Positions 3,001-24,200 are shown, counted from the first letter of the stretch. The stretch: DNA of 64,000 nucleotides from Phallusia mammillata (GCA_965637545.1 OZ281501.1:7192001-7256000); one strand, 5' to 3'. Numbers and translations are program-made. Notes: generated by a model from the sequence alone, not told the origin.

Positions 3001-6000
3001 TTACACCAAAAGGAAAAACAGTAAAGGCGATTAAAACGGATGAAGCAAAAATGCCGGAACCTACTAAAGCTCTTGCTGCGGAAATAAAACCTATGAAATC
3101 CGTTACCAAATCTAAAACTAAGGTTGTTGCTAAGACCAAGGTTGCTGAGCAAGAGATCAAACCAACATCCACGAAAACAGTTGTGGAAATACGGGACACT
3201 GAAGTGACGAACCAAACGGAAACTAAATTCAAAGCTAAAGCGGAAACCAAGAAACCTACGACGGCTGTTGAAGACGAAATCAAACCTAAAATGCAGGTTA
3301 AACGCGGAAAGCAACCAGATACAACCAAGCTACCCGACCTTGCCAAAGCCTTAGAAACACAGATGAAAATTGTGCCAAAATCCAAACCAGTAACAAAAGT
3401 TGAGAAAAAAGTGGTACAAGAGGAGGTGATACAGTCTAAACAGAGACTTGTGGCTGAATCGGATAAGGACATCGAACCTATACCAACATCGGCTGTGGAA
3501 AGTGTGCAAGAAGTTACACATCCGACGAAGGTTGATACGACCAGAGTAACAGTTGAACAGACTGATGTAACATCATCCGAAAAGACTGCAACGGTAATTA
3601 GTATTCAACAAATTACTGAAGTCTCAAAGAAAACTAGAAGAGTCTGGAACCCCAAAACTCGACAGTTTGACGAGATTGTTATTGAAGAGGCAAAGGAGCT
3701 GGTGAAAAAGCCCCAAGAGCCGACGAAAAAGACTTTAACCAAGAAAAAATCTAAGGAATTGGTACAACAAACTGCTACTGAAACAGTTGAAGTAGAATCG
3801 TCTGTAAAATCATCTTTCTATGTCCAAAAAGAAATAAGTGAGACCACAAAACCCAAAGTTGAAAAGAAAGCTCCAACACCAACGGTGACACAGAAAGAAC
3901 AACCGACTGATGACAAAAAACCGGTTGTACAAACACAAGACGAAGTTAAAGACACAAAACAAAAAGAAAAGACACCTGCAAAAGAAACCGCGCAAACTGA
4001 AGTAACTCAAGAGACGAGAAATACTAAGCTGGTATGGAATCCCAAAACTCGAAAGTTAGACGAAGTGGTTACAGAGGAATCTATTCGAAAAACGAAACAG
4101 CCAACAATAGAAACTCACGAACAACCAAAGCCTCAAGGCGAAGAAGTCAAACGAAAAACTGACGTCTCAGAAGAAATTCCTGCAGTCGACAAGCCAACTG
4201 TAACTGATACGTTGGTTTCCTCGACACCTGGTGAAACTAAAGTAAAATTGACAAAAGAGGTTTCAGAAAGTTTTGAAACCACTACGATAGTAGATGGTGT
4301 TGTAAAAACGGAGGGTGCTGAAAAGAAAACGAAAATGGTTTGGAACCCCAAAACACGGCAATTTGATGTAAGCACCGTTGAAACTACGCTTGAAGAAACA
4401 CCGATGGTTTCTCCAAAGAAAAAAGTCTCTGAAGTATCCAAGCACGCTGAGGTCGTGACTTTGAAACCCATGCAATCTTCCAAGGAGCTTCGAGAAGTTT
4501 CCATTGACCAAAAGCTACAAGAAAGAAGGGAAAGCGTAAAGGACGCCACGCTGTTTGCACAGAAGTTACCTCGGGAGTTGCAAAAGTCAGTTAAAATGAC
4601 TGAAATAACGGAAACTAAGAAAACGAAAAGGACATGGAATCCGAAAACTAAAAAATTCGACGAAATCGTAATTGAAGAATCTACTCATACCACAAAGCAA
4701 CCGGCTGATAAACGCCAGCCTGCTTTATTGAAAACTGAAGACTCTAAAACGCCACCGGCCCAACCACTAGCCCCCGAAATTGGAGCGCAACCAGCTATCA
4801 AACAAACTACGAAACAGTCAGTTATAGACAAACCTGAAGAACAGGTTCAACCGTCTCATTTGCAAACAGACGGTGTTGTCGAGGATACTGTTGCAATGAC
4901 CGGGCATACGGCAAAAGCAGCCAAAAAGGATAAGACGAAAATGCCGGAACTTACCAAAGCACTTGCTGCTGAAATGCAACCAACAAAGAGTGTTGCTACA
5001 CCGAAAACATCCAAGAAAAAGGCTAAAGCGGTCGACGAGGATGTTATTAAACCTGAAAGGCAAAAGATAACTGTTGAACCACAAGATTTGTCATCGCTCG
5101 ACAAACCAATGCAGCAAACTTTAACAGTGGTGGATGAATCTAAAAAATCTAAAACCACAACGCGAAAGTCGAAAATGGTTCGGAAATTTGATGAAATCGA
5201 AACCGAAATTGAGATAAAGCTAGAAGTTTCTCCATTGGACAAAGATACAAAGGAGAAACCGAAAGCTGTTACCGAAGTTTCTATCCAAGAAATCAAGATG
5301 ACTTCCAGCAAAGACCAGCAGGATGTCACTGATGGTATCAAACCTCTAGAACTGGAAGTTTCGCCAGTTTTGCCACTGACGAAAGTCGAAGCAAAAGAGC
5401 CTAAAAAAACTGTAAAATCAAAAACAACTTTTCAACAAGAGACAAATGAATCATTTGAAACGACGAGCGTGGTTGATGGTGTTACAAAGACTGAGTCGAC
5501 TGAAAAGAAAGCGAAAATGGTTTGGAATCCAAAAACTCGCAAATTCGATGAGATGGTGTCCGAAACGAAAATTTCCTCAAAGGTGCCGAGTAAGAAAAAG
5601 ATACCGATGGAAGAACCTACTCAAATCTCAGGACAACCTACTGTTTCTAAAGCTTCTGTAACTAGAGAACAACCAGTTCCAGAAAAACCTAAAGAAACAC
5701 CGGGAAAGAATGTCGAAGTTCAGACACAAGAAAAAGGAAAAGCTCTTTTGCACACAGATGGTGTTGTTGAAGAAGTTGTTGAAATAACCGGGCAAACACT
5801 TAAAGCACCCAAAAAGGATACGGCTAAAATACCGGAACTCTCCAAAGCACTTGCTGCAGAAATGCAACCAACACAGGCTCTTGCTAAACCAAAAACACCA
5901 AAGAAAAAAGGCAAGGCGGTGACTGAGGATGAAATTAAACCTGAAACACAAATAAATACCAGTGAACTACAAGCTCTTTCCTCGCTCGATAAACAACCTC

Positions 6001-9000
6001 AACCAATTGAAACAGTTGTGGCTGAATCTAAAAAGTCTGAAACTACAACGCGAAAGTCGAAAATGGTTTGGAACCCCACAACTCGGAAATTTGATGAAAT
6101 CGAAACCGAAATTGAGACAAAGCAAGAAGTGCTCCCAGTGGAGAAAACCAAGAAAGAGAAACCAAAAGCTGCTGATGTGATACCCGTTGATAATACTGAA
6201 CATCAAAAAGCTATAACCGAAGTTTCAATCCAAGAAACCGACATTACGGTCAGCGAAAAGCAGCAGCAAGTTGCTGACGTTATTAAACCTCTTAAACAGG
6301 AAGTTTTACCAGCTTTGCCACAGACGAAAATCAAATTTAAGGTTCCCGAAAAATCTGTTGAGTCAAAAACAACCATTCAACAGGAGACAAAGGAAACATT
6401 TGAAACGACGAGCGTTGTTGATGGTGTTACAAAGACTGAGTCGATTGAAATGAAAGCGAAAATGGTATGGAATCCAAAAACTCGCAAATTCGAGGAGGTG
6501 GTGTCAGAAACGAAAGTTACTTCAAAGGTTCCGAGCAAGGAAAAGGTCGTGATGGAAGAACCTACTCACCCCACTACACAACCGACAGTTAAACCTCAGC
6601 AGGCTTCTTTGAAATCCGAAAAGGCTGAAACGCCGACGACTCAGTCTAAAATTTCCGGTACCGCAGACCAGTCAACTGTGAAGAAAACTACAGAAGAACC
6701 AGTTCCAGAAAAAACGAAAACAATGCCGGAAAAGAAGATCAAAGTTCCACCACAAGATAAGGTTAAAGCTACACATTTGCACACAGACGGTGTTGTCGAG
6801 GAGGTTGTTAAAATGACGGGACAAACGGTTAAAGTACCACAAAAGGATCAGACTAAAATGCCGGAACTCTCCAAAGCACTTGCTGCAGAAATGCAACTAA
6901 CAAAGGCTCTTGCTAAACCAAAAACACCCAAGAAAAAAGCCAAAGCGGTTACTGAGGATGAAATTAAACCTGAAACACAACTAAAGACTGTTGAACCACC
7001 AGATTTTTCATCACTCGACAAACCACCTCAACCTCCGACACCAGCATTGCCACCAACGCAATTAGAAGTAAAGAAACCTGAAAAAAATGTAAAGTCAAAA
7101 ACTACTTTTCAACAAGAGACAAAGGAAACATTTGAAACGACCAGCGTTGTTGATGGCGTTACAAAGACTGAGTCGATTGAAAAGAAAGCGAAAATGGTTT
7201 GGAATCCAAAAACTCGCAAATTCGATGAGGTGGTGTCCGAAACGAAAATTTCCTCTAAGGTGCCGAGCAAGGAAAAGGTCGTGATGGAAGAACCTACTCA
7301 CCCCACTACACAACCGACAGTTAAACCTCAGCAGGGTTCTCTGAAATCCGAAGAAACTGAAACATCGGTTAAGTCTAAAGCTCCTGTTACTGAAGAACAG
7401 GAAACTGTGCAACAAACTAGAGAACCACAAGTTCCAGAAAAATCTAAAGCCATGCCGGAAAAGAAGATTGAAGTTCAAGGACAAGAAAAGGTTAAAGCTG
7501 CTCCTTTGCTTACAGACGGGGTTGCTGAGGAGATTATTGAAATGGCCGGGCAAACAGTGAAAGCACCCAAGCAGGACAAAACCAAAATGCCGGAACTCTC
7601 CAAAGCACTTGCTGCCGAAATGCAACTAACAAAGGCTCTTGCTAAACCAAAAACACCAAAGAAAAAAGCCAAAGCGGTGACTGGGGATGAAATTAAACCT
7701 GAAACAGAACTGAGGACTGTTGAACCACAAGATCTTTCATCACTCGACAAACCAGCTCAACCTCCTATACCAGCTTTGCCACCAACGCAATTAGAAGTAA
7801 AGAAACCTGAAAAAAATGTAAAGTCAAAAACAACTTTTCAACAAGAGACAAAGGAAACACTGGAAACGACGAGCGTTATTGATGGCGTTACAAAGACTGA
7901 GTCGATTGAAAAGAAAGCGAAAATGATCTGGAATCCAAAAACTCGCAAATTCGATGAGGTGGTGTCCGAGACGAAAATTTCCTCCAAGGTGCCGAGCAAG
8001 GATAAGGTCGTGATGGAAGAACCTACTCACCCCACTACACAACCGACAGTAAAACCTCAACAGGCTTCTCTAAAATCCGAAGAAGCTGAAACATCGGTTA
8101 AGTCTAAAGCTCCTGTTACTGAAGAACAGGCAACTGTGCAACAAACTAGAGAACCACAAGTTCCAGAAAAATCTAAAGCCATGCCGGAAAAGAAGATTGA
8201 AGTTCAACCACAAGACAAAATTAAAGCTGCTCCTTTACATACAGACGGGGTTGCTGAGCACATTATTGAAATAACCGGGCAAACAGTGAAAGCACCCAAA
8301 CAGGACAAAACTAAAATGCCAGAACTCACCAAAGCACCTGCTGCAGAAATGCAACCAACAAAGACTGTTGCTAAACCAAAAACGCCAAAGAAAAAAGTCA
8401 AAGCAGTGACTGAGGATGAAATTAAACCTGAAACGCAATTAAAGATCGTTGAACCACAAGATCTTTCAGCGTTAGAGAAACAACCTCAACCTCCTACACC
8501 AGCTTTGTCACCAACACAATTAGAAGTAAAGAAACCTAAAAAAACTGTAAAGTCAAAAACAATTTTTCAACAAGAGACCGAGGAAACATTTGAAACGACG
8601 AGCGTTGTTGATGGTGTTACAAAGACTGAGACGATTGAAAAGAAAGCGAAAATGGTATGGAATCCAAAAACTCGCAAATTCGATGAGGTGGTGTCAGAAA
8701 CGAAAGTTACTTCAAAGACACCAAGTAAGGAAAAGGTCGTGATGGAAGAACCTACTCACCCCACTACACAACCGACAGTTAAACCTCAGCAGGGTTCTCT
8801 GAAATCCTTAGAAGCTGAAACATCAATTAAATCTAAAGCTCATGTTACTGAAGAACAGGCAACTGTGCAACAAACTAGAGAACCACAAGTTCCAGAAAAA
8901 TCAAAGGCAATGCCGGGAAAGAAGATCGAAGTTCAAGGACAAGAAAAGGTTAAAGCTGCTCCTTTGCATACAGACGGGTTTGCTGAGGAGATTATTAAAA

Positions 9001-12000
9001 TAACCGGGCAAACAGTGAAAGCACCCAAACAGGACAAAACCAAAATGCCGGAACTCACCAAAGCACTTGCTGCAGAAATGCAACCAACAAAAGCTGTTGC
9101 TAAACCAAAATCACCGAAGAAAAAAGCCAAAGCGGTGACTGAGGATGAAATTAAACCTGAAACACAACTAAAGACTGTTGAACCACAAGATCTTTCATCA
9201 CTCGATGAACCACCTCAACCACTTGAAACAATTGTGACTGAATCTAAAAAATCTGAAACCACAACGCGAAAGTCGAAAATGGTTTGGAACCCCAAAACTC
9301 GGAAGTTTGATGAAATCGAAACCGAAATTGAGACAAAGCAAGAAGTGCTTCCAATGGAGAAAGCCAAGAAAGAGAAACCTAAAGATGCTGACGTGATAAC
9401 CGGTCATGATGCTGAACGTCAAACAGTTGAGACCGACGTTTCCACCCAGAAAACCGAGATGACCCCTGTCAAAAAGCATCATGATCTTGTTGATGTTGAT
9501 AAACCTACAAAACTGAAAGTTCCGACCGATTCAATAGAGGCGCAAGTCGCAGTAAAGTCCCCTGAAAAATCTGGTGAAACAAAAACAACCATTCAACGTA
9601 CGACGAAGGAAACCATTGAAACTACCAGCGTTGTTGATGGTATTATGAAATCTGAGTCGACTGAAAAGAAAGCGAAAATGGTTTGGAATCCTAAAACTCG
9701 CCAGTTCGATGAGGTGGTGTCAGAAACGAAAGTTACTTCAAAGACACCAAGTAAGGAAAAGGAGAAAACTCATCCGTTGGAATACAAATACGCTAAAGTT
9801 ATTCCACTTGAAAATGTCGAAGAACCGAAAAACATTCCAGAAGTTTCTATGGAGCAACAGCTCCGCGAACGAAGGGAGAGTGTAAAGGATTCATCACTGC
9901 TGACAACCAAACCAAGACGTGAATTTAAAACAACCACTAAAGTGACTGAGATCAGAGAAACGAAGAAAACCAAAAGGGTTTGGAATCCAAAAACTGGCAA
10001 ATTTGACGAAATCATTATCGAAGAAACGTCTGAAGTGTCTGAACAACCCCTCGTTGAGGCAGCCAAAGTTACTCCTGAGAAAGAATTAAAAGATATGTCT
10101 GACGACAGGAAATCAAAAAAGACATCTTCCAAACCTGACATAACGTTTGACGAACAAACAACCCAAAGTATTGAAACCACTACCACTACCGTTGCTGATA
10201 GGGACGAAGAAATGAAAGACATTCGATCTGTCTCTGAGCCGATCGTGACCTTCATGGATGATGAAAAAGCAGATAAACCAAAAAGCAAAACTGCACTCGA
10301 AACTAAAGGAACAGATATCGCTGTTTCTAGGCCATCTACAAAGTCAAATGTAACGTTTAAACAAGAAACTGCTGAGAATGTAATAACAACGACGGTAGTT
10401 GACGGTGTTGTGAAATCTAAAGAAACAGAAACAACAGCAAAAATGGTCTGGAATCCTAAAACTCGTCAATTTGATGAAACCGTTTCCAAAACTGAGGTCA
10501 CTTTAAAACCAAAGGAAAAACTACCAAAATCGGAATCCAAACACGCCAAAGTTGTTCCTGTAGATAAATTGAAATCAACGAAAAAAATTACTGATATTCC
10601 GATTGATCAGAAGCTAAGTGAAAGACGAGAGGGTATCAAAGACGCAAATCTAATTGAAACGAAACCAGGAAGAAAAGTCGATAAACAACCTAGTAAGCTT
10701 GCTATGAAAACCACACCTGTTAATGTTGAGGAGAAAAAGCAAACAACATTTGTAGCTGAAACCAGTAAAGTTATGGAAGATACCTCGGTGACTAAGACTT
10801 CAACTGAAACGAAGACAAAACTTGACGAAAAGATAACCAAAATGCCCAGTTCTGATGTGACAAAGCCAAAAGTTTCAATGCAGTCTGAAACTATTGAAAC
10901 AACGAGCGTTGCTACAGTGATAGATGGTGTTTCGAAAACTCAGGAATCAGCATCGAAAACAAAACTGGTGTGGAATTCCAAAACACGAAAGTTCGATGAG
11001 ACTGTTGTCAAAGAAGAAAAGGAGTCAAAGTCACAAGTTTCACATACAAAGTCATTGGAACCTGAACCCCAGAAACTTAAGCCAGGATTTTTGGATGAAA
11101 CGACAAAACCTGCTCAATCTGCCAAGGCAAAGATTTCGGAGGAAGAAATTGCATTAACACAACGAGCATTGACCCAAGATTCTGAACCAATTTTTGTCAA
11201 ACAAAAACCTACCGAGCGAAAAGGTGACAAACCATTCAAACCCTCCGAAGAAAAACCAACACTCGAAGAACCAAGCAAAGACAAGACTAGGTCTTCGAGT
11301 AAAGTGGCAAAGCCTGAAACATCAAAACCACAAACACTGGTCACTGAAACGCAACACACTAAAAGCAAGTTTGTATGGAATCCGAAAACCCGAAAATTCG
11401 ATGAAGTCGTCCTGGAAGAGTCAACAGACCACGTTACTACTCGACTTGATAAAACTCCGTTAAAATCGGAAACCGAGCTTTTGGAACCACTGTTCGATTC
11501 TAAAGTGCAACAAATGCCAAAACTGGATGATACTGAACTTCAACAAAAGACATCTAAAACGAAGGCAAAACCAGATATTGCAGAGAAAAAAGGAAAAGAA
11601 TTTTCCAAACCACAAACTTTACCAGAGCCTGTGGACGTACGAGTTGAATCAGTTCGTAATGTTCCGATTACAGTGGAAAGGGTAGCAAAAGACGAAAGCA
11701 CTAGCTTTTCGTTTGGACGCTCCAGCGAGACCACTCGAGTAACTGAGTCTTACGGCGACGGAGTACAGAAAGTACAAACTAGCAAGACAAGCAAACGAGT
11801 CTGGAACTCACAAACTGGTAAATTCGACGAGGTGGAGAGCGAGACAAGGTTTGAGAGTTCTGGTTCCCACAAACAACAGGATGAGCGATCACAGGCTTTT
11901 AAAATTACCATGGAAGAAGACGAGGCGTATAAAATTCGTTCTAAAAGCTCAAAGGCACCTCTTAAGATTGTTACCCAGCCACCACTATTCATAACATACA

Positions 12001-12273
12001 TTCAGAATCAGGAGGTTGATGAAGGATCACCTGCAGTGTTTGGGTGCAAGATAAGCGGTGATCCTCAACCTACCCTTGAGTGGTTTGTTGACGGAGTACA
12101 GATTGAGCCACCTTGTGAGGGATTCACCTTAATTTCCGATGACGATTCGAATGTGTATAACTTGGTCATAGAAAATCCGACCTACACGAAACACAACAAA
12201 GTGATTGTTCGATGTAGAATTGTCAACAAACTCGGTTCAGCTGAGTGCAGCGCCCGTTTAAACATCAAAAAGA
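1..12273 (+). CDS. TTN: Giant (>12.2 kb) exon: about 3,980 aa K/E/T/V/P-rich repetitive elastic region followed by one Ig domain (about 11965-12270)
   Basis: Frame is open from nt 3 (the ORF track start at 27 is only a GTG). Donor A|GTGAGT at 12274 is phase 1 and matches acceptor TAG 12411. The C-terminal PPLFITYIQNQEV...W...C.IVNKLGSAECSARLNI is an I-set Ig. Confidence 0.9.
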
Positions 12274-15200
12274 GTGAGTTTAGACATGACATTTGATCAT
12301 CATTAATCTTAAAGGTTATCCCACTAAAATGTAAAAAAATAATACTGCTATTAGATTACATTTTAATACCGTTGTAGTGTTGAAACTAAATCTAAATTTT
12401 GCATTTGATAGAAAAGGGCAAAGAAAAGAAGCAAAAGCCCAAAGAGGAACCCATTAAGGAAATCGCCCCTAAAATTGTTAAAAAACTCAAAGATCAAAAA
12501 GTTACACTAAAAACTTCGGCTCGTCTCGAATGTCAAATCAGTGGCAAACCTACTCCACGAGTAACTTGGCTGCTTAATGGAAGTCCGATCCGTGATCGCA
12601 GCATTAGAATTGACATCTCAAGAAGTAGTGAAACTGGCAAAGTCCCCATTGTCGTGGCCAGCTTGAGCGTTCACCGGGTGAACAAACAACACACTGGTGT
12701 ATACGAGTGCCAAGCTGTCAATGCCAAAGGCTCGGTTACGACTAGTGCCACATTACAGGCAGTGGAGAAGGACACGCGATCTGTGACAGGTGCCAGTCAC
12801 CGAATGCCTCTGTCACATGGCATGTCATACCATTGACACATGATAAAAACATGTCAACAATATGGTTTGCGGGAGTCGAAAACTTTTACCACATTATGCA
12901 CCATAAAATGTCCAAAACATATTCATTTTTGTGCTTGTAATAGCCAAATCCCAAATAGATCATTTATACAGACTATTTGGAGTATAATATACATTCAATG
13001 AGTTTTTAGGCTTTTGCGGCCCAGCGAAAACAAAATGCAAACCATTATTGTGACAAGGTATAAAAGAAAGTTGTAAACAACAAAATTCACGACATACTGG
13101 ATAAACACCCAAATGTTTAACGGCATGTAAACCCATTACAACATGTCATTTTCATTTTCAGGCTGTACACAGTCAAAGTGGCATCATCTTAACAGCTATT
13201 TCTGTTTCAGGGCTTTTCGAGCAGCCATCACCGGAATCTGAACCGGAGGATATGCAACGACAAGAAGGTACGTGGCATTTTTCATCTCAAACACATCTAC
13301 GATCGTTGTACGTCATTTAAATTGCACGTAGGCACGTTTTGTTTGAAAGTAAGGCAAGGCTACCCCATCATACTGACCTAAAGCCGACGTTCAACAAAAT
13401 TTGCCTACGTGCAATCATCGTTTACGCGTCGGAACGTCTTTTCACCTTATCGCGTTTCACTTTCATTTCACTCTTCTTTCGTGCGTTGTTTCTTGCTGCG
13501 TCCAAATCTTGCGGAACTTTCTCAAACTCTTTGGTTACACAAAAAATTGCCAGAAGGACTTGCATGGCTTTTACCTGGTAAGTGGGGTATCCTTTCCTTT
13601 CTTTAACCTCAGTTTCCAACTGCTGTCTCTAAACTAGGCTAAACTTTGTTTATATTAGCATTCACTGTTTTACTTTACAATGCAATACCAAAAACCAGGC
13701 CTTGGCTGCATAGAACAACTTTACGTGACTTGAACAGGTTTTATGCGGGACGAATGCGATGCCAATAATCGTTTGCACGTTCGAAGCTCAATGACTGGCA
13801 AAGAGTTCACAATTCAGCGCTCTGAAGTCAGTCGCTTGGTTGGTAATTACATCACTCAATCCGATATCGACCCTTCCCTAAACGATACTCCGATATTGTC
13901 GAGGTAAAATACACTTAAATACAGAAATAACTTATCTGATGGTCCACCACAATTAAACGGTTTCTTTTTGCAGAACAAAACAAATCAAAGAGTTGGATGA
14001 TGATTTAATTCGTCCGTCTTTCATACAAAAGCCAAAAATCCAATCAGTCCTTTCTGAAGCCCATGCTCGATTTGATTGTCTGTTTGTTGCCTCGCCTCGC
14101 CCTAGCGTCGTCTGGCTACATTCGGATGCCGAAATCAAGGTATCTATTTCCTCCCCTGAATTTTTCGACCTTGTAATTACATGTATTTCATGTCAATGAT
14201 ATTAGACCTTGTTAATGTCAAGTAGTTATCCCATCAAATAAAGCTGTGCTTTTTCTTCAGGCAAACAGCGCAAAATACAAGACCACGCTCGAGAGGGACA
14301 TGTTTTCCTACCAAGCATTCCTCGAGATCCAGAGCTGCCAATCTAATGATGCGGGAACTTACAAAGTGGTCGTACGCAATCGGGAGGGAGAAGCAACAGC
14401 ATCTGTGCCGTTGGTTGTCACAGAGCGCAGTAACGTTGAATTACCACATACCGATACAACTTCCAGTCACAGAAAATCGGAAATGAAACTGAACCTTGAT
14501 TCAATGACACACCTTGATTCTGGTAACGAGGGTCTGTTACCAAGGACTAACGGCGCCACGCCAAGACAGCCATATTCACCAAGAAAGTATTACGAACGTC
14601 GGGCGAGAGGTGGTCGTACTAGCAGTCTTTCAGAGCCCAGCAGGACTTCCAGTAGCACTCCCTGTGGGCGTACGCACTCGCTAAGCCGGTCGAGTGAGAT
14701 GGAACAGTCGATGTCCTCGATCTCAACCTTATCGTCGCTTTCTGGCGGCAGTCCACCACAGGATAAGCTCTCAATGTTACAAAGCGACCAAGAAGCGTCA
14801 GACCAAGGCGATATTGAGAGCCCAATCACCCACAGTAGCAGGCAGAGCTGCATTAAAACTCAAATATCAAACGAAGGTTTATCAGTGGCATTATTTCGGC
14901 GAGACGACACCGATACGTCGGGAATCGAAACACTGCATTCGTCTCGGACTTCAGTAAAGCGCGATCACAGTGTTTCACCTTTGAAAAACTCTAACCGCGG
15001 CGTCCCACCTGTGGTTATATCTGAACTGCCAGAAAACGTTTCGGTAAACACTGGAGACGCAATTAGCCTGACTTGTAGTGTTTCCGGTCGACCTCGCCCC
15101 AAAGTCTTATGGATGCGTGATGCCGAAGATGTTCGTAACGCGGCCCACTACAGCTTTGAAGAGGCATTGCGCTCTACAGAGGACAAACTAACCTATGACT

Positions 15201-18200
15201 TTATGCTGTCACTGGTTGACGCACAACGAGAACACAGTGGAACTTACACACTGTCAGCTTTCAACCTGTATGGCGATGTTACCAGTCACACTCTGCTGTC
15301 GGTAGTTGATCACAGTAAGTTATATGGCTGTATTTGAGTGGTTTTGTGCAAAATGTTTGTGTTATGTACACTGTTGGTACCCGCTTGCTATTTATCATAG
15401 AATAAGGTAAAAACTCTCGAACATAAATCCGCATACAATAGACTTGCAAAGTATGGGATTTTTTATTTTAAAATGCATGGACTAAGCACCAACAGTTTAT
15501 ACACACTAAAACAAATCTAGTGTTTTTCTTGCCGTCACATGTGAGGCAATCGATACAAAAAGCGAATTTAAGGACAAAAACAATTGAAGCGACTGTAAAT
15601 GGGCCAAAACGTTGTTTGTGATTGTTTAAACAAAGTGTTCGCTTGCCAACCCTATTAAACTGCATGTTGACCGAACAAAACTACAGTGTTGGCATGAAAA
15701 CTCACGATATCAAGACATCATCACTGTTTGTCAGCATGCTGTTGTGTTTCACATCTTGTGCAAAGGTACGTATGTGTCTGCATGGATTTTATATCTATTG
15801 GTCAATCTCTAAGCTTAAGTGTTAAAATATTCATAACCTTAAATTCCAATAACGGCGCCTCGCTACATATAAATAAGTAATGACTCAAAAAATAAGAAGT
15901 GTCCTTGGTTAAATCATATTCGTAGCAATTGTATTAGTTAACGCCTTGTAGGGATTTGCGTTCTGCGGATTGCATTGGTTTTAATGCTTTATTTATGATC
16001 TAAGGCGAGGAAATGCATACAAAATGAGGATAATTGACATGTTAAGTCTAATATTTTGCTATATTTTCAGTGAGCAAAGAGGAGCCCAATTGCAATGCTT
16101 CGAATAACGATGAATACCTAGAACGTGGCTGTGAAACTCTCGAAGACCAATCAGAATCCGACCAAAATTGCGTGATTGACAGTGACATACTTGTGACGGA
16201 AGATGAAACAAATGCACAGCTTTATTCGAACAACGAATTAGAATTCGAGATGGGCAATGGAATTCGCAAAATTCTTCGAAGTAGCGAATGTACAAAGATC
16301 GATGCTGAAGAGACTCTGAATTTGTCAATCACAGAGTTAACAAACGAAACGCTGGAATTTCGAGATGATAACAAACCAGAAACGGAACTATTCATTTTGT
16401 CCGACGATGAAAAGCTAGAATGCGACAAGATTGCACAAAATTTGCAAGAAACTGGCGATGTTTACATACAAACTCGTATTGAAACGAATTCACCAGTAAA
16501 CTGTTCAGCTCGTTGCGAGGAATCAGGCCTCGATGGCAACACAACCTTCCAACATGAGCCAAAAGGCGAAATATGCAAAGCATCACGATTTACTGTTACC
16601 AAAGTTGAAAATCATATACCAAACAATCTAGAAGATTCGGTTCCAACATCAACCAACAATAAGGAAACTGAATATCTTTCTGACTCAAGTGAAATCGAAC
16701 CACCTCAAGAACTGGTTACACCAATTGAAGACACGAACATCATTATAACGGAAGAGCAAACAGAAAAACCCACAAAAAGCATTGGTTATCTTGGTAGGAT
16801 TCCGACCATAGAAGTTGAGCCTGTAGAAGATGAGTCGAATATTTCAGAGGATTTAGCAGAAAGTAGCGACAATGAAACTATTTCTGATCAATCGCCGCTT
16901 CCCTACTTTACACAAGAACTCAAGAACGTTACGGTGTTGGAAGGCAGTAATGTCGAGTTGCAATGCACAACAGCCTTCGACGATTTAAAGATAACGTGGT
17001 ACAAAAACGCCGAGCAAATTATCAACGGTCGCGACGGCTATTTCGTCGAATCCAAAGACGGACATCATCGTCTCACCATACTTGACGCAAGGTAATAAGA
17101 CACTGTAAATTGATACAAAAAGTTATATCTAGATAAAAGTAAAATAACTGAACAGAAAAAACAAATCATTGTGAAGCCAAAATTAATAGCGTACTTGCTT
17201 TTCATGTTCTATTGCAATTTATTTTTTTGCTTAATATGTTTTTTGTATTGCAGATGGTCTGAAGACGAAGGTATATTTACATGCCAAGCCGAAACGAGCA
17301 CTGATGTGATTTGTACCACCTCTGAAGTGTATGTGGAAATGACAAAAGAAAAACTGTACAAAATCTTGGACTTCCAACAGCCAACATCGACTGTAACGGA
17401 TGAAAACACCTCTCTTGATTCAACTCCTGAATTACCCCAGGAGCAGACAAATGAAAACTTGGACGACTCGATCTATCACAGCGCAGAAGAGAGTTTGGAT
17501 CATTTTGAGAACAGTGAAGACTTTATGGAGCGACATGAGCTCTCTCCCATCCTGGAAGAAGAGGAAGAATGCATATCACGCGCCTCTTCGTCCGTCAGAT
17601 TATCCACCGAGCAAATCTCGACATCTGCTCAGAACCCTTCTATAATATTCCGTAGATCATCATACGATTCTCTTGCATCCTTCGAAGCTCACGAGAAACT
17701 TGTTGCTTCCTTGCCTGCGGATGCTTTGAGAATTGAAAGCGATAAACCAAACGAGACCAATACTTGTCCCAGTGATGATTCAGATGAAGAATACCTAGAA
17801 GGTGCTTGCCCATCACGTGCATCTAGCGCTTGTAGGCCTCTTGCTTTCACCCCAGACGATATGGCGACTCGTTGTCGCGATTTTAGCGATAACGAAGGCG
17901 GATCTCGGCCGGGTTCGGTTAACAGTCGACGTAGCCTTTGGCGCAAAGGCAGCAAAAGTGACAGTTTTGACTTGGCCCGATGTCTTGAAATGGACGAGGA
18001 ATCTGATGCCACTATGACAGATAACAACTACATGAGCTGCGATGACGACGAATTGTTGTTCACTCTGGACTGTCACAGTGATGACAATATGCCACCTGTT
18101 CCTGAAAACTCCTCACCGGTCGATGATACCTTACCAGCCGAAATTGATAACTTCCCATCTACTAACAACGAAGAGCCTGTGTGTGAAACACCAGCTTGCA

Positions 18201-21200
18201 GTTACCAAGATACTGTAGAGCACATTGTAGAAACAACACCAGTAAGGACCCTTTCAATGGATGTACTTCAACCCTACACTGCAACTATTGTAAAAAATGA
18301 GCCACTAGTTGAAGAAGAAAGTAACGAACGAGATGAACTGGCCGATGAGTTTCTCGGCTACCGATATGAAAGATCACGAGCAGACTCAGTATTTGATCTA
18401 AAGTCACTGCATGAACGTGTTAAGGGCTTGGATGTGACAGAAAGTCGTAGATCAAGCGAGGGATTTGAATCAAACGAGTCCTCGGAGCCTTGTGAGGATC
18501 TTTGCGTGGATGTAAATGGAAATTTAAAGATTGTTCCAGCAATAGAGGTCAGAGAAGCGCCGGACAGTGGTGAAGAACTTATAATCCCTAGTCCGGAATC
18601 TTTGCGTTCATTTCCGCGCCGTGATATTAAATCTCCAGTCGGGAAAAGGGGTTTGACACTCGATGACGTCATCAGGATTAGTGCCCCTGCCTTTGACGCG
18701 GTGTCGAGCATCGCCGATGACTTCTATTCATGCGTGTCGTCTACTGCAACAACGCCCACTTGCGGGTTTCGCACAGACGAATGTCCTTCAGAAACTGGAT
18801 ATCAAACGCCCCCTGAAAAAGCCAATAGACCCACTGAACTAAAGTACTTTGAAACAGGGTCAGAAGACAAGGAAACAGAGTACGAGGACTGCTCTACTCC
18901 TGTCAACTCGCCTGGTCACTCTGAACAGACAACAGCCACTGCTTCGGGATTCGAAACCCCGCCGAAATTCTACTACGTTATTCCTCCAAAGTTTCTCGGC
19001 AAAAAGTCCATTCAAATTACGGTCATGCGAGGCGGCTGTGCAATAATTGCGTGTTCAGTAATCTCACATCCCGAAGCCAAGGTAGCTTGGTACAAAGATG
19101 GACGTCTTATGGATATATACAACCGGGTATCTCAGCACATTTACAATGAGCCACCCAAGGAATGGTCAGACAACTTTGGAAACCAAGGAAATTGGAGACC
19201 AGATTGGCTATGCCAGCTTGAAGACAGAGATATTGGATGTCCACAACAATTAGACGTCCACTACGTCCTAAAGATCCAGCATTTGGTGCCGCGGGATGGC
19301 GGGTTGTACATTTGTAAAGCATGGAACTCCGCTGGGGTTGCTACAAGAATTATAAGACTTAGTGTTGAATAATTAAAAAAAGCATTAATTGATATGTTTT
19401 GTCTTAAACAAACAATAAATAGTGTGTTTTAGTTTGCGGTGTTTCTACTTTCATTGTGTAAATGTGTTTTATCTTAAATACTATTGAGACATATATTATA
19501 AGATTAAAAACCTGCATGAAAATTTATTTGCATGATTTTTAGTTAGAAATTTATGCAGCGTGAAGTATGATCGAGCTACCTTCTATTTATATTTCTGGCC
19601 TCAGCAGGTGTCAGCTCGTATAGCGAGTTTACGATGGCGACAGCTCAGGAAATCTCACGACGAACCACATTTACCGATGGCGACCAGTCCAATGTTCTAT
19701 TCAGCCAAGCCGCAATGTCTATGAAACAGCGCAAACCGCGTAGCAAGCCAATTTTTCGGCAACCTCTTCGAGATGTGACCGTCCATGTTAGCGAAACTGC
19801 AGCTTTCCACGCCGAGATCACTGGTTGGCCGACGCCGTTGGTCACGTGGCTACACAACGGTCACGTGATCAAGGGCGACGAAAACTACCGCTACTTGAAG
19901 CGAGGAGACAGCCACTCTATGGTAGTTCCAACAGCTGAAATTAACGATCAAGGGGTGATCGGTTGCCAGGCAACAAACGTTCTGGGCGAAACAACAAGCA
20001 CCGCCCGTTTGACTGTGTTAGATGCCAACTATTCGGATACGTCCTATTCCGATTTACCCTCTGTTCCCTTCGATGATTCAACTATCAATGTTACCGTGTT
20101 GGACAGTCTGGAACGCTCAAGGGATAATAGTGGGAGCAAACTAAACGCAACTGGAATAAGCAACTTCTCTGATTTTGAATCAACAGCGTCGTCTCGCCAT
20201 GTTACGTTTGCCAGCGAACACACAACAGCAATGGAGCTTTCCCAAACATTTGGAACCTCAATGTCTGAATTAGCAGGAAATGAAACAACAGAACAAGATT
20301 TATCAAATGTTTCAACAACAGCCTTGCCATCGAGCCGTGATTCATCAATGGAAGTGATAAAGAAGCCGCCAAAGAAGACCAAACGCCGTGTAAAGATTGA
20401 ACGTCGGAGTTTCGGATCAATGACTGAGCAAGATGGTGTACAGCAGCATCTAAGCTGGACTGACGAAGTACGGAAGCTAATCCGAGAAGAGATGGAGATG
20501 CGAGAGGAGCTGAAACAAGAAAAGGAAATCCGAACCCGAATTGAGGAAGCCGAAACTGTTGTTCTTACACAAACCTCCCCACGATTTATGAAAACTATAA
20601 GCGATTGTGAAGTGAAAGCGGGAGAAACGGCGCATTTTGTTTACATTCTAGCGGCAAACTCTAATGCCAAAGTCACTTGGTTGCGCAACGGAGTGACGAT
20701 TTCACTTGATCGTAAAAATTCTGATACAGCGACTGACGGGAATGTTGGAATTATTTTTGATGATGATGCAGGCTGTTTAGTCATCAGTGAAAGCTCCTCG
20801 AATTACAGTGGAGTCTACTCTTGTGTGGCTTCGAATGATCAGGGCAGCACCAAGTGTAGTGCAAGACTGATTGTTCACGGCGCAAAAGAACAACGCACAC
20901 GAGATGTGGAAACATTTATTGACACTGAAAATTACTCGCAAACGCCAACTTCAAACTTAGTCGACCGTGAATCGCAAACTCAAGAGTCTCGGCTTCTTCC
21001 TGTGGAAGACCAGAAGATTCAAGAAGCTTTTAAACAGCTGGAAGACGCCGAGAAGTCGCAAAACGTGTCTGAGGTTATTATCCAGCAGTCGGTATATGAC
21101 GATGCCAACCGAGAACCGATTGCCACAAACGAGCGGCGGAAACGCAAGAAAAAGAAGCGACGTGACTTGGCTGGACCGAGCATTGGACGATTGGACGACT

Positions 21201-24200
21201 TCGAGACTGGTGAAGGTTTGCTGATTGCACAGCACGCGTGCTTGGGCACACAGCACCACCACGCAATGTAGAGGATACATGCACTGCACGAGACAGGCCA
21301 ATTAGACAGTATTAAACAAAACTTTAAAGCATCAGACAGGATTAGGCACGCGTCTAGCACTGCACGATACAGCACCCGGCACTCGTTTGTATTATTGCTT
21401 GCCACTGCGACGGGCAAACACTTAAGTGATACAGGATTATGTCGACACTGCTTTAGAAAAATGATTGCTTGTGATCACCCGCGGTTTGTTCATACCTCGC
21501 ACATTGTATTTCGTTTTCACTGTTATAATGACTTTAATATTTTCTGGATATCTGGTAACTTTTTATGTTCTATTGCAGAGGAAAAGATCCAGCCTCCCGC
21601 GTTTACCGAAAAACTTGCCGTGAACAGGGCTCAACCCGGCGACAAGGTACAAAAATCCAAAGTGCTGGTACTAACTCTTAACATACTAAACTAAACCGTG
21701 TGCAAGTCTTATTATTTCGGCTATTTTTTGAAATGTTTTAAATTAACCCATTGCAAACAATATACTAAGGTCAAGCTCTCGTGCGCTGTCAGCGGATCTA
21801 CGCCGATCCAGATCACATGGACTCGTGACGGGTCAGTCATCGATGGCGAGAATGCCCGATACACCATTGGGAAAAATGAAAACCAACCTTGTGTTGAAAT
21901 CAACGACGTGGCTTTCAGGTTTTGCAAAATTACCAAGTGTGCAACTAAAACAAACATCTACTCATTTGGATGAATGTATTCCCATGTTAAAGGGCATATT
22001 TTGTCGCTTTAGAGAAAATTTAACTGAAATGTGGATTTGAAACGTTCACATGTTTCTTCGCTATTCTTGGCAAAGTTAACATTGGGACAAAGCTGCTTTC
22101 TAACACAACAATAATTCTAACTGAAATACAATTCTGTTTGATTGCAGTGACGCTGGGGAATACACAGTGACAGCTCAGAATATCGCTGGAACCGCATCGT
22201 GCACAGCGCCTCTGGTGGTTGAAGGTCGGTGAAGCATTTGTTTTTGCTTCACGAGTTTTGTGAAAAACTGAAGTGTCATTGCCACATGTGAAATGCATGC
22301 GGCCACTGGGCCACAAACATTCCATTCACTGCGAAATAGCATGCGCCTATACGTTTTCTGATGCGGGTTGTAAAAGGTGTTTTCCAATGTGCTTTTTCAC
22401 ACACTGTTAACTGCATACACTGTGTAATAACGGCTTGTTGCACCCCATACAATAAAGTTTTATGTTTTCTAATACATGTTCGAACTGTTTAGCGTCTTGC
22501 ACTGTGTTGTTTGCAAACTCTATCACATATATCCATACATTATATATTATTTCTACTTTGCGTAAATACACAGTGTTCAAACGCATGTGAGTTTGGGTTT
22601 GTTGCTTTCGCCTTACGAACGCGGTGCTTGTAATGCCTTCCACTATTGAAATGAGCTTTTATCTTTTTCATTTACTTTTTTCTCCCTTCTCTCTTATTTC
22701 TTTACCCTTTCTTTATGCTTCTCTCTTTTTACTCTCTTGCCACTAGGCGTCGCACCTTCGTTCGTACAGCGTCCCGAAGGTGGGATAAGAGAAGGCGGTC
22801 AGGGCTTTTTGCTTACTGCAGTGATTGATGGAAACCCAGAGCCTGATGTGTACTGGAATCACAATGTAAGTTTTGCATAGGGCAGTCGCATAATTCGAAG
22901 CCAAGGTCTAAATTACATTACACAAAGGCAACCTATCAGCTGTTGGTCAAAACATAAGTTTCTTAACGTTTTTCCGTACGTGGCTACAGAAAACATTGGT
23001 ACACATCCCTATTTTTAAATTTCCACTATGTAGCCCAATGAAAAACCCCGACGTTACTCACTAGTTAAGGAATATTGTTTTAAACCAATAAATTGTCTGT
23101 TTCTTTAGTTCTGCTTAGTTTAGACCATTTAAACCTAAAAGGCTGACTTGAAAGTACCATACAAACCCGAGATTCTGAGTTTTATATCCTTATGGTTTGC
23201 CATTAATTTCGTAACGTATCGATATCCCCCCATAACTTGAATATAACAAGCATGTGCCGTTATGCAATATCACACCCGGCACATTACGCCGTAACCCGAT
23301 GGTGAGAATTGCGTAACAAGCAACATTTGCATCAATAATACTTGTCATCGCCAGCGGAGGTGTTGACGATCCCGCAACTCATGTCTCATGACCTAGATCT
23401 CGAAAAACTTACACCTCTGTTTGGCTATATAACCGTCTCACCGCCGTCTTACTTCATTCATTCAGGGGCAGCCTTTGGTAGAGGACGACCGTCGAACTAT
23501 TGTTCATGAGGAGAAGGGCCAGTTTGGCTTGGAGATTCTTGGCTTGACTATGGCTGATACTGGGGAATATGAGTGTGTGGCTGAAAACGAGGCAGGGGAA
23601 GCGAGATGCAAAGTTTCAATTGACGTTGAAGGTACAGCAGAGGCAAACGTCAACGCTTGGTCATGTTGCGGCAACGTATAGATTGGGATAGAGTTCGATA
23701 AAAAGTACTAGGAAAGAGGGCTCAAACGGCTAGTAAAGAGGGCTCAAACGACGCAATGTAACTGATTTTAATTTGCCTAAGTCTGATTCAAGTCTGTGTT
23801 TACATGGAAGTTTAGATGTGTATCCTGTGTAACGCTTACATTTTTTTCTTAAGAACAGATAGAAGGTTTAGGGTTTACATAGTAGTGAAGGAATAGTTAG
23901 ACCAATTGTCTCTTAGTTAACTATAGTGAGTTAGTGATAACTTTAAAAATAGCTAGCATAAGCGCCAGTTGGTAAGTATTTATTGATTTGTATAAAAACA
24001 ACGACAGAAGCTTCCCTTGTTGACGTTTTGCGGCAAACTGCGACGATGGATTCACAGACATCCAGTGACATGACCATGACACCAGCACGGTTCGTCACAG
24101 AGCCAAAAAGCGAAACAGCGGCAACAGGTAAGATTTCACAAACTGCTGAAACAAATCATTCAATAGTCCGCGAAGTGTATTAAATGCTAGTTAACGACAA

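What the first reader, a model, noticed from the sequence alone, without database searches (positions are those of the whole stretch)
16071..19480. Novex-3-like truncating branch in an invertebrate-chordate titin
Seen: exon 14261-15314 ends in phase 1 and can splice in frame either to 16071 or directly to 19605/19608. The 16071 route runs through two exons (about 1,045 aa, mostly acidic unique sequence with 2 Ig). It ends in TAA right after an Ig, followed by AATAAA and a GT-rich element. Known: vertebrate TTN has the alternative terminal exon Novex-3 (exon 48) directly upstream of N2B (exon 49), giving a short Z-disc-anchored titin with no A-band. Inference: the same short-titin switch exists here in the same position, so it either predates vertebrates or arose convergently.
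Basis: partly seen in the sequence, partly recalled or inferred. Interest (0 to 1): 0.85.

Follow-up and report, generated by a model that had tools for sequence, protein, structure and literature searches.

The report
Conserved short titin ending in ascidians
In this sea squirt's giant titin gene, a transcribed two-exon side branch stops the protein right after a highly conserved immunoglobulin domain; eight ascidian lineages keep the same ending, so a short titin resembling vertebrate Novex-3 exists outside vertebrates, though common descent is not shown.

Summary
Exon end 15314 (phase 1), branch exons 16071-17091 and 17254-19372, TAA at 19370, AATAAA at 19414 and the NAGNAG acceptor at 19605/19608 are all as described.

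Intron-less contigs from three independent studies carry the joints 15314>16071 and 17091>17254. They read straight through the TAA, so the branch is real spliced titin mRNA and the stop is not an assembly error.

The branch is 1,046 aa, pI 4.3, with 2 Ig domains. Its end, a stop 1-8 aa after a strongly conserved I-set Ig, recurs at the same place in six other ascidian loci. In Ciona intestinalis it is annotated only as 'uncharacterized LOC113474550'.

Three points remain open:
- The skipping joint 15314>19605/8 was not seen. It is inferred from conserved phase and from coding sequence that lies upstream of the first ATG of the next exon in two species.
- No poly(A) end was seen.
- No specific sequence similarity to vertebrate Novex-3 was found. 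The branch also lies downstream of the giant 4,089-aa elastic exon, so 'same position' is only loosely true.

The main rival is that titin is expressed as two halves, with an operon-like boundary at 19605/8.

Verdict: a new variant of a known kind. The scan noted this same stretch once before (s1-347113).

The parts
14261..15314 (+). Shared upstream titin exon (second half of an Ig, Ser-rich unique sequence, one complete I-set Ig). Its donor A|GTAAGT is phase 1. The exon's 5' end was not checked.
   Evidence: ORF and Pfam; donor read; contigs of three studies run through it into 16071.
15315..16070 (+). Intron of 756 nt, GT..AG, removed in RNA.
   Evidence: Joint 15314>16071 in X1, X5 and X14. 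One 171-nt low-depth RNA contig lies inside it at 15482-15652, in X1 only.
16071..17091 (+). Branch exon 1: acidic unique sequence plus the first two thirds of an I-set Ig (16901-17091). Ends in phase 2.
   Evidence: The phase-1 acceptor and phase-2 donor are conserved in L001, L005, L006 and L007.
17092..17253 (+). Intron of 162 nt, GT..AG, removed in RNA.
   Evidence: Joint in X1, X5 and X14.
17254..19372 (+). Branch exon 2: rest of the first Ig (17254-17338), about 550 aa of acidic unique sequence with conserved short motifs (DLSPILEExEE, SYDSLxSFEAxEK, SRxSSACRPL, GYxTPPE, LKYFET, GFxTPPKF), the terminal Ig and the stop.
18983..19369 (+). Terminal I-set Ig with an insert of about 35 aa between strands D and E. 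It is 47-58% identical across ascidians, as well kept as the best-conserved neighbouring titin Ig compared (47-63%) and better than the other two (28-56%).
   Evidence: Pfam; alignments; identities; AlphaFold model pLDDT 71.5 with a low-confidence insert; Foldseek gives sarcomeric I-set Igs.
19370..19372 (+). TAA stop. A stop falls 1-8 aa after the same Ig in all ascidian relatives.
   Evidence: No difference at this place in any of the four runs laid. Matches end 4-7 aa before the C-terminus in 7 relatives; stops read in L001 and L003.
19414..19419 (+). AATAAA, a candidate poly(A) signal, followed by a G/T-rich stretch at about 19420-19475. A second candidate, ATTAAA, is at 19503-19508. Use not shown.
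   Evidence: Contig ends at 19464 (X5) and 19491 (X1); X14 runs on.
19605..19608 (+). Tandem (NAGNAG) acceptor of the next titin exon, phase 1. A tandem acceptor also occurs in L003.
19605..21268 (+). Next titin exon (Ig, unique sequence, Ig, unique sequence). Its frame is open from the acceptor; the first ATG is at 19634; its 3' end was not determined.

Best explanation
The stretch is a conserved 3'-terminal branch of the ascidian titin gene.

Shown: the phase-1 donor at 15314 is spliced to 16071. A second, phase-2 intron (17092-17253) is removed. Translation runs through 1,046 aa of mostly acidic sequence with two Ig domains and stops at TAA 19370, one residue after a strongly conserved I-set Ig. 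The product is a titin that keeps everything upstream, including the 4,089-aa elastic exon, and lacks all downstream I-band, A-band and kinase parts.

Inferred:
- The mRNA ends by cleavage and polyadenylation somewhere between about 19440 and 19607.
- Full-length titin is made when the same donor instead joins the phase-1 acceptor at 19605/19608, before or in competition with 3'-end formation. This is the logic of vertebrate Novex-3.
- The conserved terminal Ig and the invariant Ser/Thr-Pro motifs in front of it are a docking module for a sarcomeric partner.

Whether the branch shares descent with vertebrate exon 48 or arose separately is open.
For: - Splice sites, phases, stop and hexamers were read directly.
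- Contigs from three studies (X1, X5, X14) lack both introns exactly at GT..AG, run from the upstream titin exon into the branch, and pass the TAA unchanged. A fourth study (X9) holds only pieces of the branch.
- The same layout is found in six other ascidian loci: upstream Ig exon with phase-1 donor, phase-1 branch acceptor, stop just after the Ig, 230-1,050 nt of non-coding DNA, then the next exon.
- The only specific relatives among 1.84 billion representatives are 7 ascidian proteins. Each match ends 4-7 aa before the C-terminus. One is Ciona intestinalis XP_026691854.1.
- The terminal Ig is 47-58% identical, as well kept as the best-conserved neighbouring titin Ig compared and better than the other two.
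- For the skipping route: the next exon's frame is open from a phase-1 acceptor. That acceptor is the top-ranked candidate in the window, L001 and L008.
- In L001 the conserved HVLFSQP lies upstream of the only ATGs of that exon's start. In L003 the block GLALLSSL lies upstream of the first in-frame ATG; it matches GLSLLESL in L008, and all six shared residues use different synonymous codons. Both suggest that coding enters this exon from an upstream exon.
- The architecture matches the published description of Novex-3: own stop and poly(A) signal, Ig domains between long insertion sequences, and a C-terminal Ig (PMC13649281).
Against: - The joint 15314>19605/19608 is in none of the contigs.
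- In X1 and X14 the RNA is colinear with the genome across 19373-19607 and across the acceptor.
- No poly(A) tail or clear end was seen, and the contig ends differ (19464, 19491, none).
- Contigs drop minor paths, and the tandem acceptor splits the joint in two, so absence carries little weight. It still leaves the switch unobserved.
- Six of seven species have an in-frame Met shortly upstream of the conserved motif of the next exon, and the window's ATG 19634 has a good context. An independent start there is therefore not excluded.
- There is no sequence evidence of homology to vertebrate exon 48.
Confidence: 0.65

Rival explanations
1. Split titin. The branch is not an alternative but the regular end of an upstream 'Z-disc/I-band titin' message. 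The downstream I-band/A-band/kinase part is a second message from the same transcription unit. Its 5' end would be made at the 19605/19608 acceptor by spliced-leader trans-splicing (a Ciona-type operon boundary where the upstream poly(A) site abuts the acceptor) or by an internal promoter. Translation would start at ATG 19634.
For: - Only the 15314>16071 joint is seen in three studies. The upstream contigs pass the donor without a break.
- RNA is colinear over the whole 233-nt spacer and across the acceptor in X1 and X14. This is what a 3' UTR reaching the acceptor plus unresolved precursor would give.
- Ciona operons lack intercistronic DNA, and the upstream 3' end abuts the trans-splice AG (PMC1488885).
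- The first ATG after the acceptor is in frame in the window, L001, L007 and L008. Six of seven species have an in-frame Met 7-24 aa before the conserved motif.
- NCBI models the Ciona ortholog of the branch and the Styela ortholog of the next exon as separate genes.
Against: - In L001 and L003, conserved peptide with synonymous codon changes lies upstream of the first in-frame ATG of the downstream exon.
- L003, L005 and L006 have out-of-frame ATGs first.
- Phase-1 compatibility and an open frame from the acceptor are kept in all seven species.
- The spacer is 500-1,050 nt in L005-L007, unlike the zero-spacer Ciona operons.
- No leader sequence appears as a loose end, but contigs would not keep one.
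Confidence: 0.2
2. Independent nested gene. The branch is a separate gene with its own promoter inside a titin intron, as the Ciona annotation 'uncharacterized protein LOC113474550' implies, and is not part of titin.
For: Ciona intestinalis XP_026691854.1 (504 aa) is modelled on its own. One low-depth 171-nt RNA contig lies in the intron upstream of the branch, at 15482-15652, in X1.
Against: Contigs of three studies join the titin exon ending at 15314 to 16071 in frame, and extend a further 362-418 nt upstream of 14261. The phase-1 donor/acceptor pairing is conserved in seven species. No joint from the intronic contig to 16071 was reported.
Confidence: 0.03
3. Ordinary internal exon or artefact. 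The TAA is an assembly error, or it is bypassed through an internal donor near the end of the Ig, so the exon is simply part of full-length titin.
For: A weak phase-1 GT (A|GTGTTG) lies 8 nt before the TAA.
Against: No run differs from the window at the TAA. Contigs of three studies are colinear through the end of the Ig, the stop and beyond. A stop falls 1-8 aa after the Ig in all eight lineages, with no donor conserved in phase.
Confidence: 0.03

Closest known systems
Vertebrate titin Novex-3 isoform (TTN exon 48; about 650-700 kDa)
   Same: Both are a branch inside the titin gene entered from a shared upstream exon. Both carry their own stop codon and poly(A) hexamers, have long unique 'insertion' sequence interspersed with Ig domains, and end in an Ig domain. 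Both give a titin without the A-band part (PMC13649281, PMC5852582).
   Different: - No detectable specific sequence similarity.
- 1,046 aa with 1-2 Ig domains, against more than 2,000 aa with 6 Ig.
- Two exons (one in stolidobranch-like relatives) against one.
- It lies downstream of the giant elastic exon, so the short product keeps the spring.
- In the RNA sampled, inclusion is the only route seen. In mouse and human heart Novex-3 is 8-14% of transcripts (PMC13649281).
- Published conservation is vertebrates only (PMC6098106).
Kettin, the short product of Drosophila sallimus and the C. elegans kettin/titin-like gene
   Same: A short Z-disc/I-band product of a titin-like gene. It has already been compared with Novex-3 as a possible pre-vertebrate counterpart (PMC6098106 and its supplement).
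   Different: Kettin is a run of Ig-linker modules, with no acidic unique tail ending in one conserved Ig. No sequence comparison was made here.
Ciona intestinalis LOC113474550 (XP_026691854.1, 'uncharacterized protein', 504 aa)
   Same: It is the ortholog of branch exon 2, 50% identical by phmmer (37% over the full alignment). It has the same terminal Ig and ends 7 aa after the match.
   Different: It is annotated as a stand-alone gene of unknown function, not as an end of titin. Its link to the titin exon could not be checked because the locus is not on record.
Ciona-type spliced-leader operons without intercistronic DNA
   Same: Same-strand coding units with a short spacer, an acceptor directly after the upstream unit's non-coding tail, and RNA colinear across the boundary (PMC1488885).
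   Different: The downstream unit's coding sequence seems to begin before its first ATG in two species. The spacer is up to 1 kb in others. No leader was seen.

Membership tests
Titin Novex-3-type truncating branch | Entered in frame by splicing from an exon shared with full-length titin | tested here: met
   Joint 15314>16071 (GT..AG, phase 1) in contigs of three studies. The phases are conserved in seven species.
Titin Novex-3-type truncating branch | Own in-frame stop codon that removes all downstream titin | tested here: met
   TAA at 19370-72 is unchanged in all runs laid. A stop falls 1-8 aa after the same Ig in eight ascidian lineages.
Titin Novex-3-type truncating branch | Own cleavage and polyadenylation site | tested here: inconclusive
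   AATAAA at 19414, ATTAAA at 19503 and a G/T-rich stretch are present. Contigs end at 19464 and 19491 in two studies but run to 19838 in a third, and no poly(A) tail was seen. Such hexamers are common by chance in this A/T-rich DNA.
Titin Novex-3-type truncating branch | Alternative to a skipping route from the same donor that gives full-length titin | tested here: inconclusive
   The joint 15314>19605/8 is absent from the contigs. The phase-1 acceptor, the open frame, and conserved coding upstream of the first ATG in L001 and L003 argue that it exists.
Titin Novex-3-type truncating branch | Sequence homology to vertebrate TTN exon 48 (I18-I23 and insertion sequences) | tested here: inconclusive
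   phmmer against 1.84 billion representatives and a profile search gave only ascidian relatives and generic Ig hits such as hemicentin, obscurin and a bird titin Ig run. No vertebrate exon-48 sequence was at hand for a direct comparison.
Titin Novex-3-type truncating branch | Position after the proximal tandem Ig segment, before N2B and PEVK | tested here: not met
   The branch lies about 3.8 kb downstream of a 4,089-aa K/T/E/V/P-rich elastic exon at 27-12296. The next exon has no specific N2B match.
Titin Novex-3-type truncating branch | Ig domains separated by long unique sequence, with a C-terminal Ig | tested here: met
   Two I-set Igs, about 820 aa of acidic unique sequence, and an Ig that ends one residue before the stop. 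Compared with PMC13649281.
Titin Novex-3-type truncating branch | Binds obscurin and sits at the Z-disc/I-band | not testable with these tools
   The fold is a generic sarcomeric I-set Ig. Titin M10, Obsl1 Ig1 and myotilin are among many equal matches.
Ciona-type spliced-leader operon | Downstream unit's mRNA begins with the spliced leader at the acceptor | not testable with these tools
   Only contigs were available.
Ciona-type spliced-leader operon | Downstream unit has its own conserved start codon, with nothing coding before it | tested here: not met
   Conserved peptide lies upstream of the first in-frame ATG in L001 and L003. Out-of-frame ATGs come first in L003, L005 and L006.

The most novel reading that the evidence does not exclude
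In ascidians, titin is mainly made as two polypeptides from one transcription unit. The first is a Z-disc/spring half that ends at the conserved Ig (TAA 19370). The second is an I-band/A-band/kinase half whose message begins at the 19605/19608 acceptor, through spliced-leader trans-splicing at an operon-like boundary. This would be a chordate intermediate between the split insect arrangement (sallimus plus projectin) and the single vertebrate titin.
Probability: 0.2. Interest if true: 0.8.

Novelty: new variant of a known kind. Interest (0 to 1): 0.6.

Why it matters
Published work treats Novex-3 as a vertebrate feature whose conservation is 'a longstanding mystery', and compares it only loosely with insect and nematode kettin (PMC6098106). 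No paper in the searchable library links it to ascidians or amphioxus.

Here a transcribed, deeply conserved short-titin ending appears in the sister group of vertebrates. It gives a simple, genetically tractable chordate in which to ask what a truncated Z-disc-anchored titin does. It also supplies a small conserved module to test for partners: the terminal Ig plus invariant Ser/Thr-Pro motifs.

It corrects an annotation as well, since Ciona LOC113474550 is probably the end of a titin isoform.

If the rival reading is right, ascidian titin is expressed in two halves. That would bear on how the single giant vertebrate titin arose.

Tried and rejected
- Literature: searches for novex-3 with amphioxus, ascidian or tunicate found nothing relevant. 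The Ciona connectin paper (Hanashima 2012) is not held. The tunicate muscle review does not mention titin.
- Long annotated ascidian titin models: a word search with the last Ig of the giant exon gave only nematode, insect and echinoderm proteins.
- Profile search with eight ascidian branch sequences, sized to admit a vertebrate exon-48 ORF: it returned only the query's own first sequence.
- A bird 'TITIN, partial' hit is plain tandem Ig and gave no specific match.
- The Ciona locus of XP_026691854.1 is not on record.
- Scan of JGI metagenome contigs with the end of species B's upstream exon, meant to catch spliced RNA: three hits, all genomic with the intron following.
- Ranking acceptors by pyrimidine content picks a phase-1, open-frame acceptor first in only three of seven species, so it is weak as a statistical test.
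- Contig depths were not used to rank isoforms, as the tool warns. A long full-length message would also be under-represented far from its 3' end.
- Rejected: assembly error at the TAA, an internal donor that bypasses the stop, and a purely independent nested gene.
Full report
**What is in the sequence.**
The window holds a large part of one giant titin-like gene on the + strand. It contains:
- a single 4,089-aa ORF rich in K, T, E, V and P (27-12296);
- several Ig-bearing exons;
- from about 43 kb onward, long Fn3/Ig exons of the A-band type.

- exon end 15314, A|GTAAGT, phase 1;
- exon start 16071;
- exon end 17091, phase 2;
- exon start 17254;
- TAA at 19370-19372;
- AATAAA at 19414-19419, followed by a G/T-rich stretch;
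- a tandem acceptor giving exon starts at 19605 or 19608, both in frame with a phase-1 donor.

The spliced branch encodes 1,046 aa with pI 4.29, and its non-Ig part is 22% D+E. One I-set Ig is split by the 162-nt intron. A second I-set Ig ends one residue before the stop.

**Transcript evidence.**
Twenty public runs of the same organism were listed. Contigs of four of them, from four studies, were laid on 14261-20200.

In three studies (X1, X5, X14) contigs of 1-4.7 kb lack both introns exactly at GT..AG: 15314>16071 and 17091>17254. They continue upstream of 14261. They also read through the whole second branch exon, the TAA and the AATAAA with no difference from the window. The branch is therefore part of spliced titin mRNA, and the stop is not an assembly slip. 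The fourth study holds only three small pieces, all within the branch.

Three things were not seen:
- the skipping joint 15314>19605/19608;
- any joint leaving the branch;
- any poly(A) tail.

The contigs end at 19464 (X5) and 19491 (X1). In X1 a second contig starts at 19491 and runs colinear across the 19605/8 acceptor. In X14 one contig runs colinear from 17252 to 19838. The tool warns that contigs show presence, not absence, and that depths must not be compared, so I treat the missing skip joint as unobserved rather than refuted. The tandem acceptor would also split that joint into two weaker paths.

**Organism and relatives.**
The best named relative of the next exon is a Styela clava 'titin-like' protein.

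A phmmer search of branch exon 2 against 1.84 billion representatives gave only seven specific relatives. Each has the match ending 4-7 residues before its C-terminus. One is Ciona intestinalis XP_026691854.1, 'uncharacterized protein LOC113474550'. Everything else is generic Ig similarity, such as hemicentins, obscurin and a bird titin Ig run.

I fetched six orthologous loci (L001, L003, L005-L008). All show the same order:
1. an upstream Ig exon; its phase-1 donor was read in five of the six loci (none was picked out in L006);
2. a phase-1 branch acceptor;
3. in four of them, a phase-2 intron at the same place;
4. a stop 1-8 aa after the same Ig;
5. 230-1,050 nt of non-coding DNA;
6. the next titin exon.

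The terminal Ig is 47-58% identical across these species. That is as good as the best-conserved neighbouring titin Ig compared and better than the other two. Several short motifs in the acidic region are invariant or nearly so. The first Ig is kept in some lineages and lost in others.

A structure model gives an ordinary I-set Ig with a low-confidence insert of about 35 residues. Foldseek matches many sarcomeric Igs about equally well, including titin M10, Obsl1 Ig1, myotilin and titin I1.

**Is it an alternative branch or the regular end of a gene?**
The colinear RNA over 19373-19607 and the lack of a skip joint fit a rival. In it, the upstream message always ends here. The downstream half of titin is a second message whose 5' end is made at the 19605/8 acceptor, as at Ciona operon boundaries where the upstream poly(A) site abuts the trans-splice acceptor (PMC1488885).

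Three comparative observations argue against this rival:
- The next exon's frame is open from a phase-1 acceptor in all seven species. That acceptor is the top-ranked candidate in the window, L001 and L008.
- In L001 there is no ATG at all between the acceptor and a point beyond the conserved HVLFSQP motif.
- In L003 the block GLALLSSL lies upstream of the first in-frame ATG and behind two out-of-frame ATGs. It matches GLSLLESL in L008, with all six shared residues encoded by different synonymous codons.

Coding therefore seems to enter this exon from an upstream exon. The only phase-compatible donor nearby is the one at 15314.

On the other side, six of seven species have an in-frame Met shortly before the motif, and the first ATG is in frame in four of seven. 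An additional start there is not excluded.

I put the alternative-branch reading at 0.65 and the split-titin reading at 0.2.

**Comparison with what is known.**
Vertebrate Novex-3 is described as exon 48 with its own stop and poly(A) signal. It has more than 2,000 aa and six Ig domains (I18-I23) between long insertion sequences, and it ends in Ig I23 (PMC13649281). It is reached from exon 47 in all vertebrates tested (PMC5852582). It is said to be conserved among vertebrates, with kettin as a possible invertebrate counterpart (PMC6098106).

The ascidian branch works the same way in outline and has the same kind of architecture. Three differences keep it from being filed as a Novex-3 ortholog:
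- Specific sequence similarity was not found.
- It is half the size, with one or two Ig domains.
- It lies after the giant elastic exon, so the short product would include the spring. The claim of 'same position' is not met.

I therefore call it a new variant of a known kind. Common descent or convergence is left open.

**Limits.**
- Only assembled contigs could be laid, and only once.
- The gene's 5' end is outside the window, so the size of the short product is unknown.
- No vertebrate exon-48 sequence was available for direct comparison.
- The Ciona titin models were too long for the length-limited search.

Noticed in passing
window 14878-14879: The window reads TT where contigs of all three transcript-type runs read GG. 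This is a two-base difference inside the shared upstream exon, either an allele or a reference error.
   Followed up: no
window 15482-15652: A 171-nt low-depth RNA contig (X1 only) lies inside the 756-nt intron, with no joint to 16071. It could be precursor RNA or a minor exon or start.
   Followed up: no
window 27-12296; L003 83-1009: The giant elastic exon's WN(P/T)K(T/L)R(K/Q)F motif also occurs in the upstream exon of a distant ascidian (L003: WNTKLRQF, WNTTLHRF). The repeat is therefore conserved, not species-specific.
   Followed up: partly
window 19603-19607; L003 about 10015-10019: The acceptor of the next exon is a tandem NAGNAG (tcAGcAG, atAGcAG) in two distant species. It would add or drop one residue.
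   Followed up: partly
Ciona intestinalis XP_026691854.1; Styela clava 'titin-like' 530 aa (P0003): Public annotations model the ortholog of branch exon 2 and the ortholog of the next exon as separate small genes. Both look like pieces of titin.
   Followed up: partly
window 19634: The first ATG after the 19605/8 acceptor is in frame with a good context (acgATGg). Several ATGs upstream of the acceptor (19516-19567) would spoil a colinear 5' UTR.
   Followed up: partly
window 18115: A>G in one run (X5) only, inside branch exon 2. Probably a polymorphism.
   Followed up: no
window 18890-18982 and relatives: Three invariant Ser/Thr-Pro motifs (LSPI, GYxTPPE, GFxTPPKF) precede the terminal Ig. The C-terminal Ig region of vertebrate Novex-3 was reported to bind Pin1, which recognises phospho-Ser/Thr-Pro (PMC13649281). 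This is a lead only.
   Followed up: no
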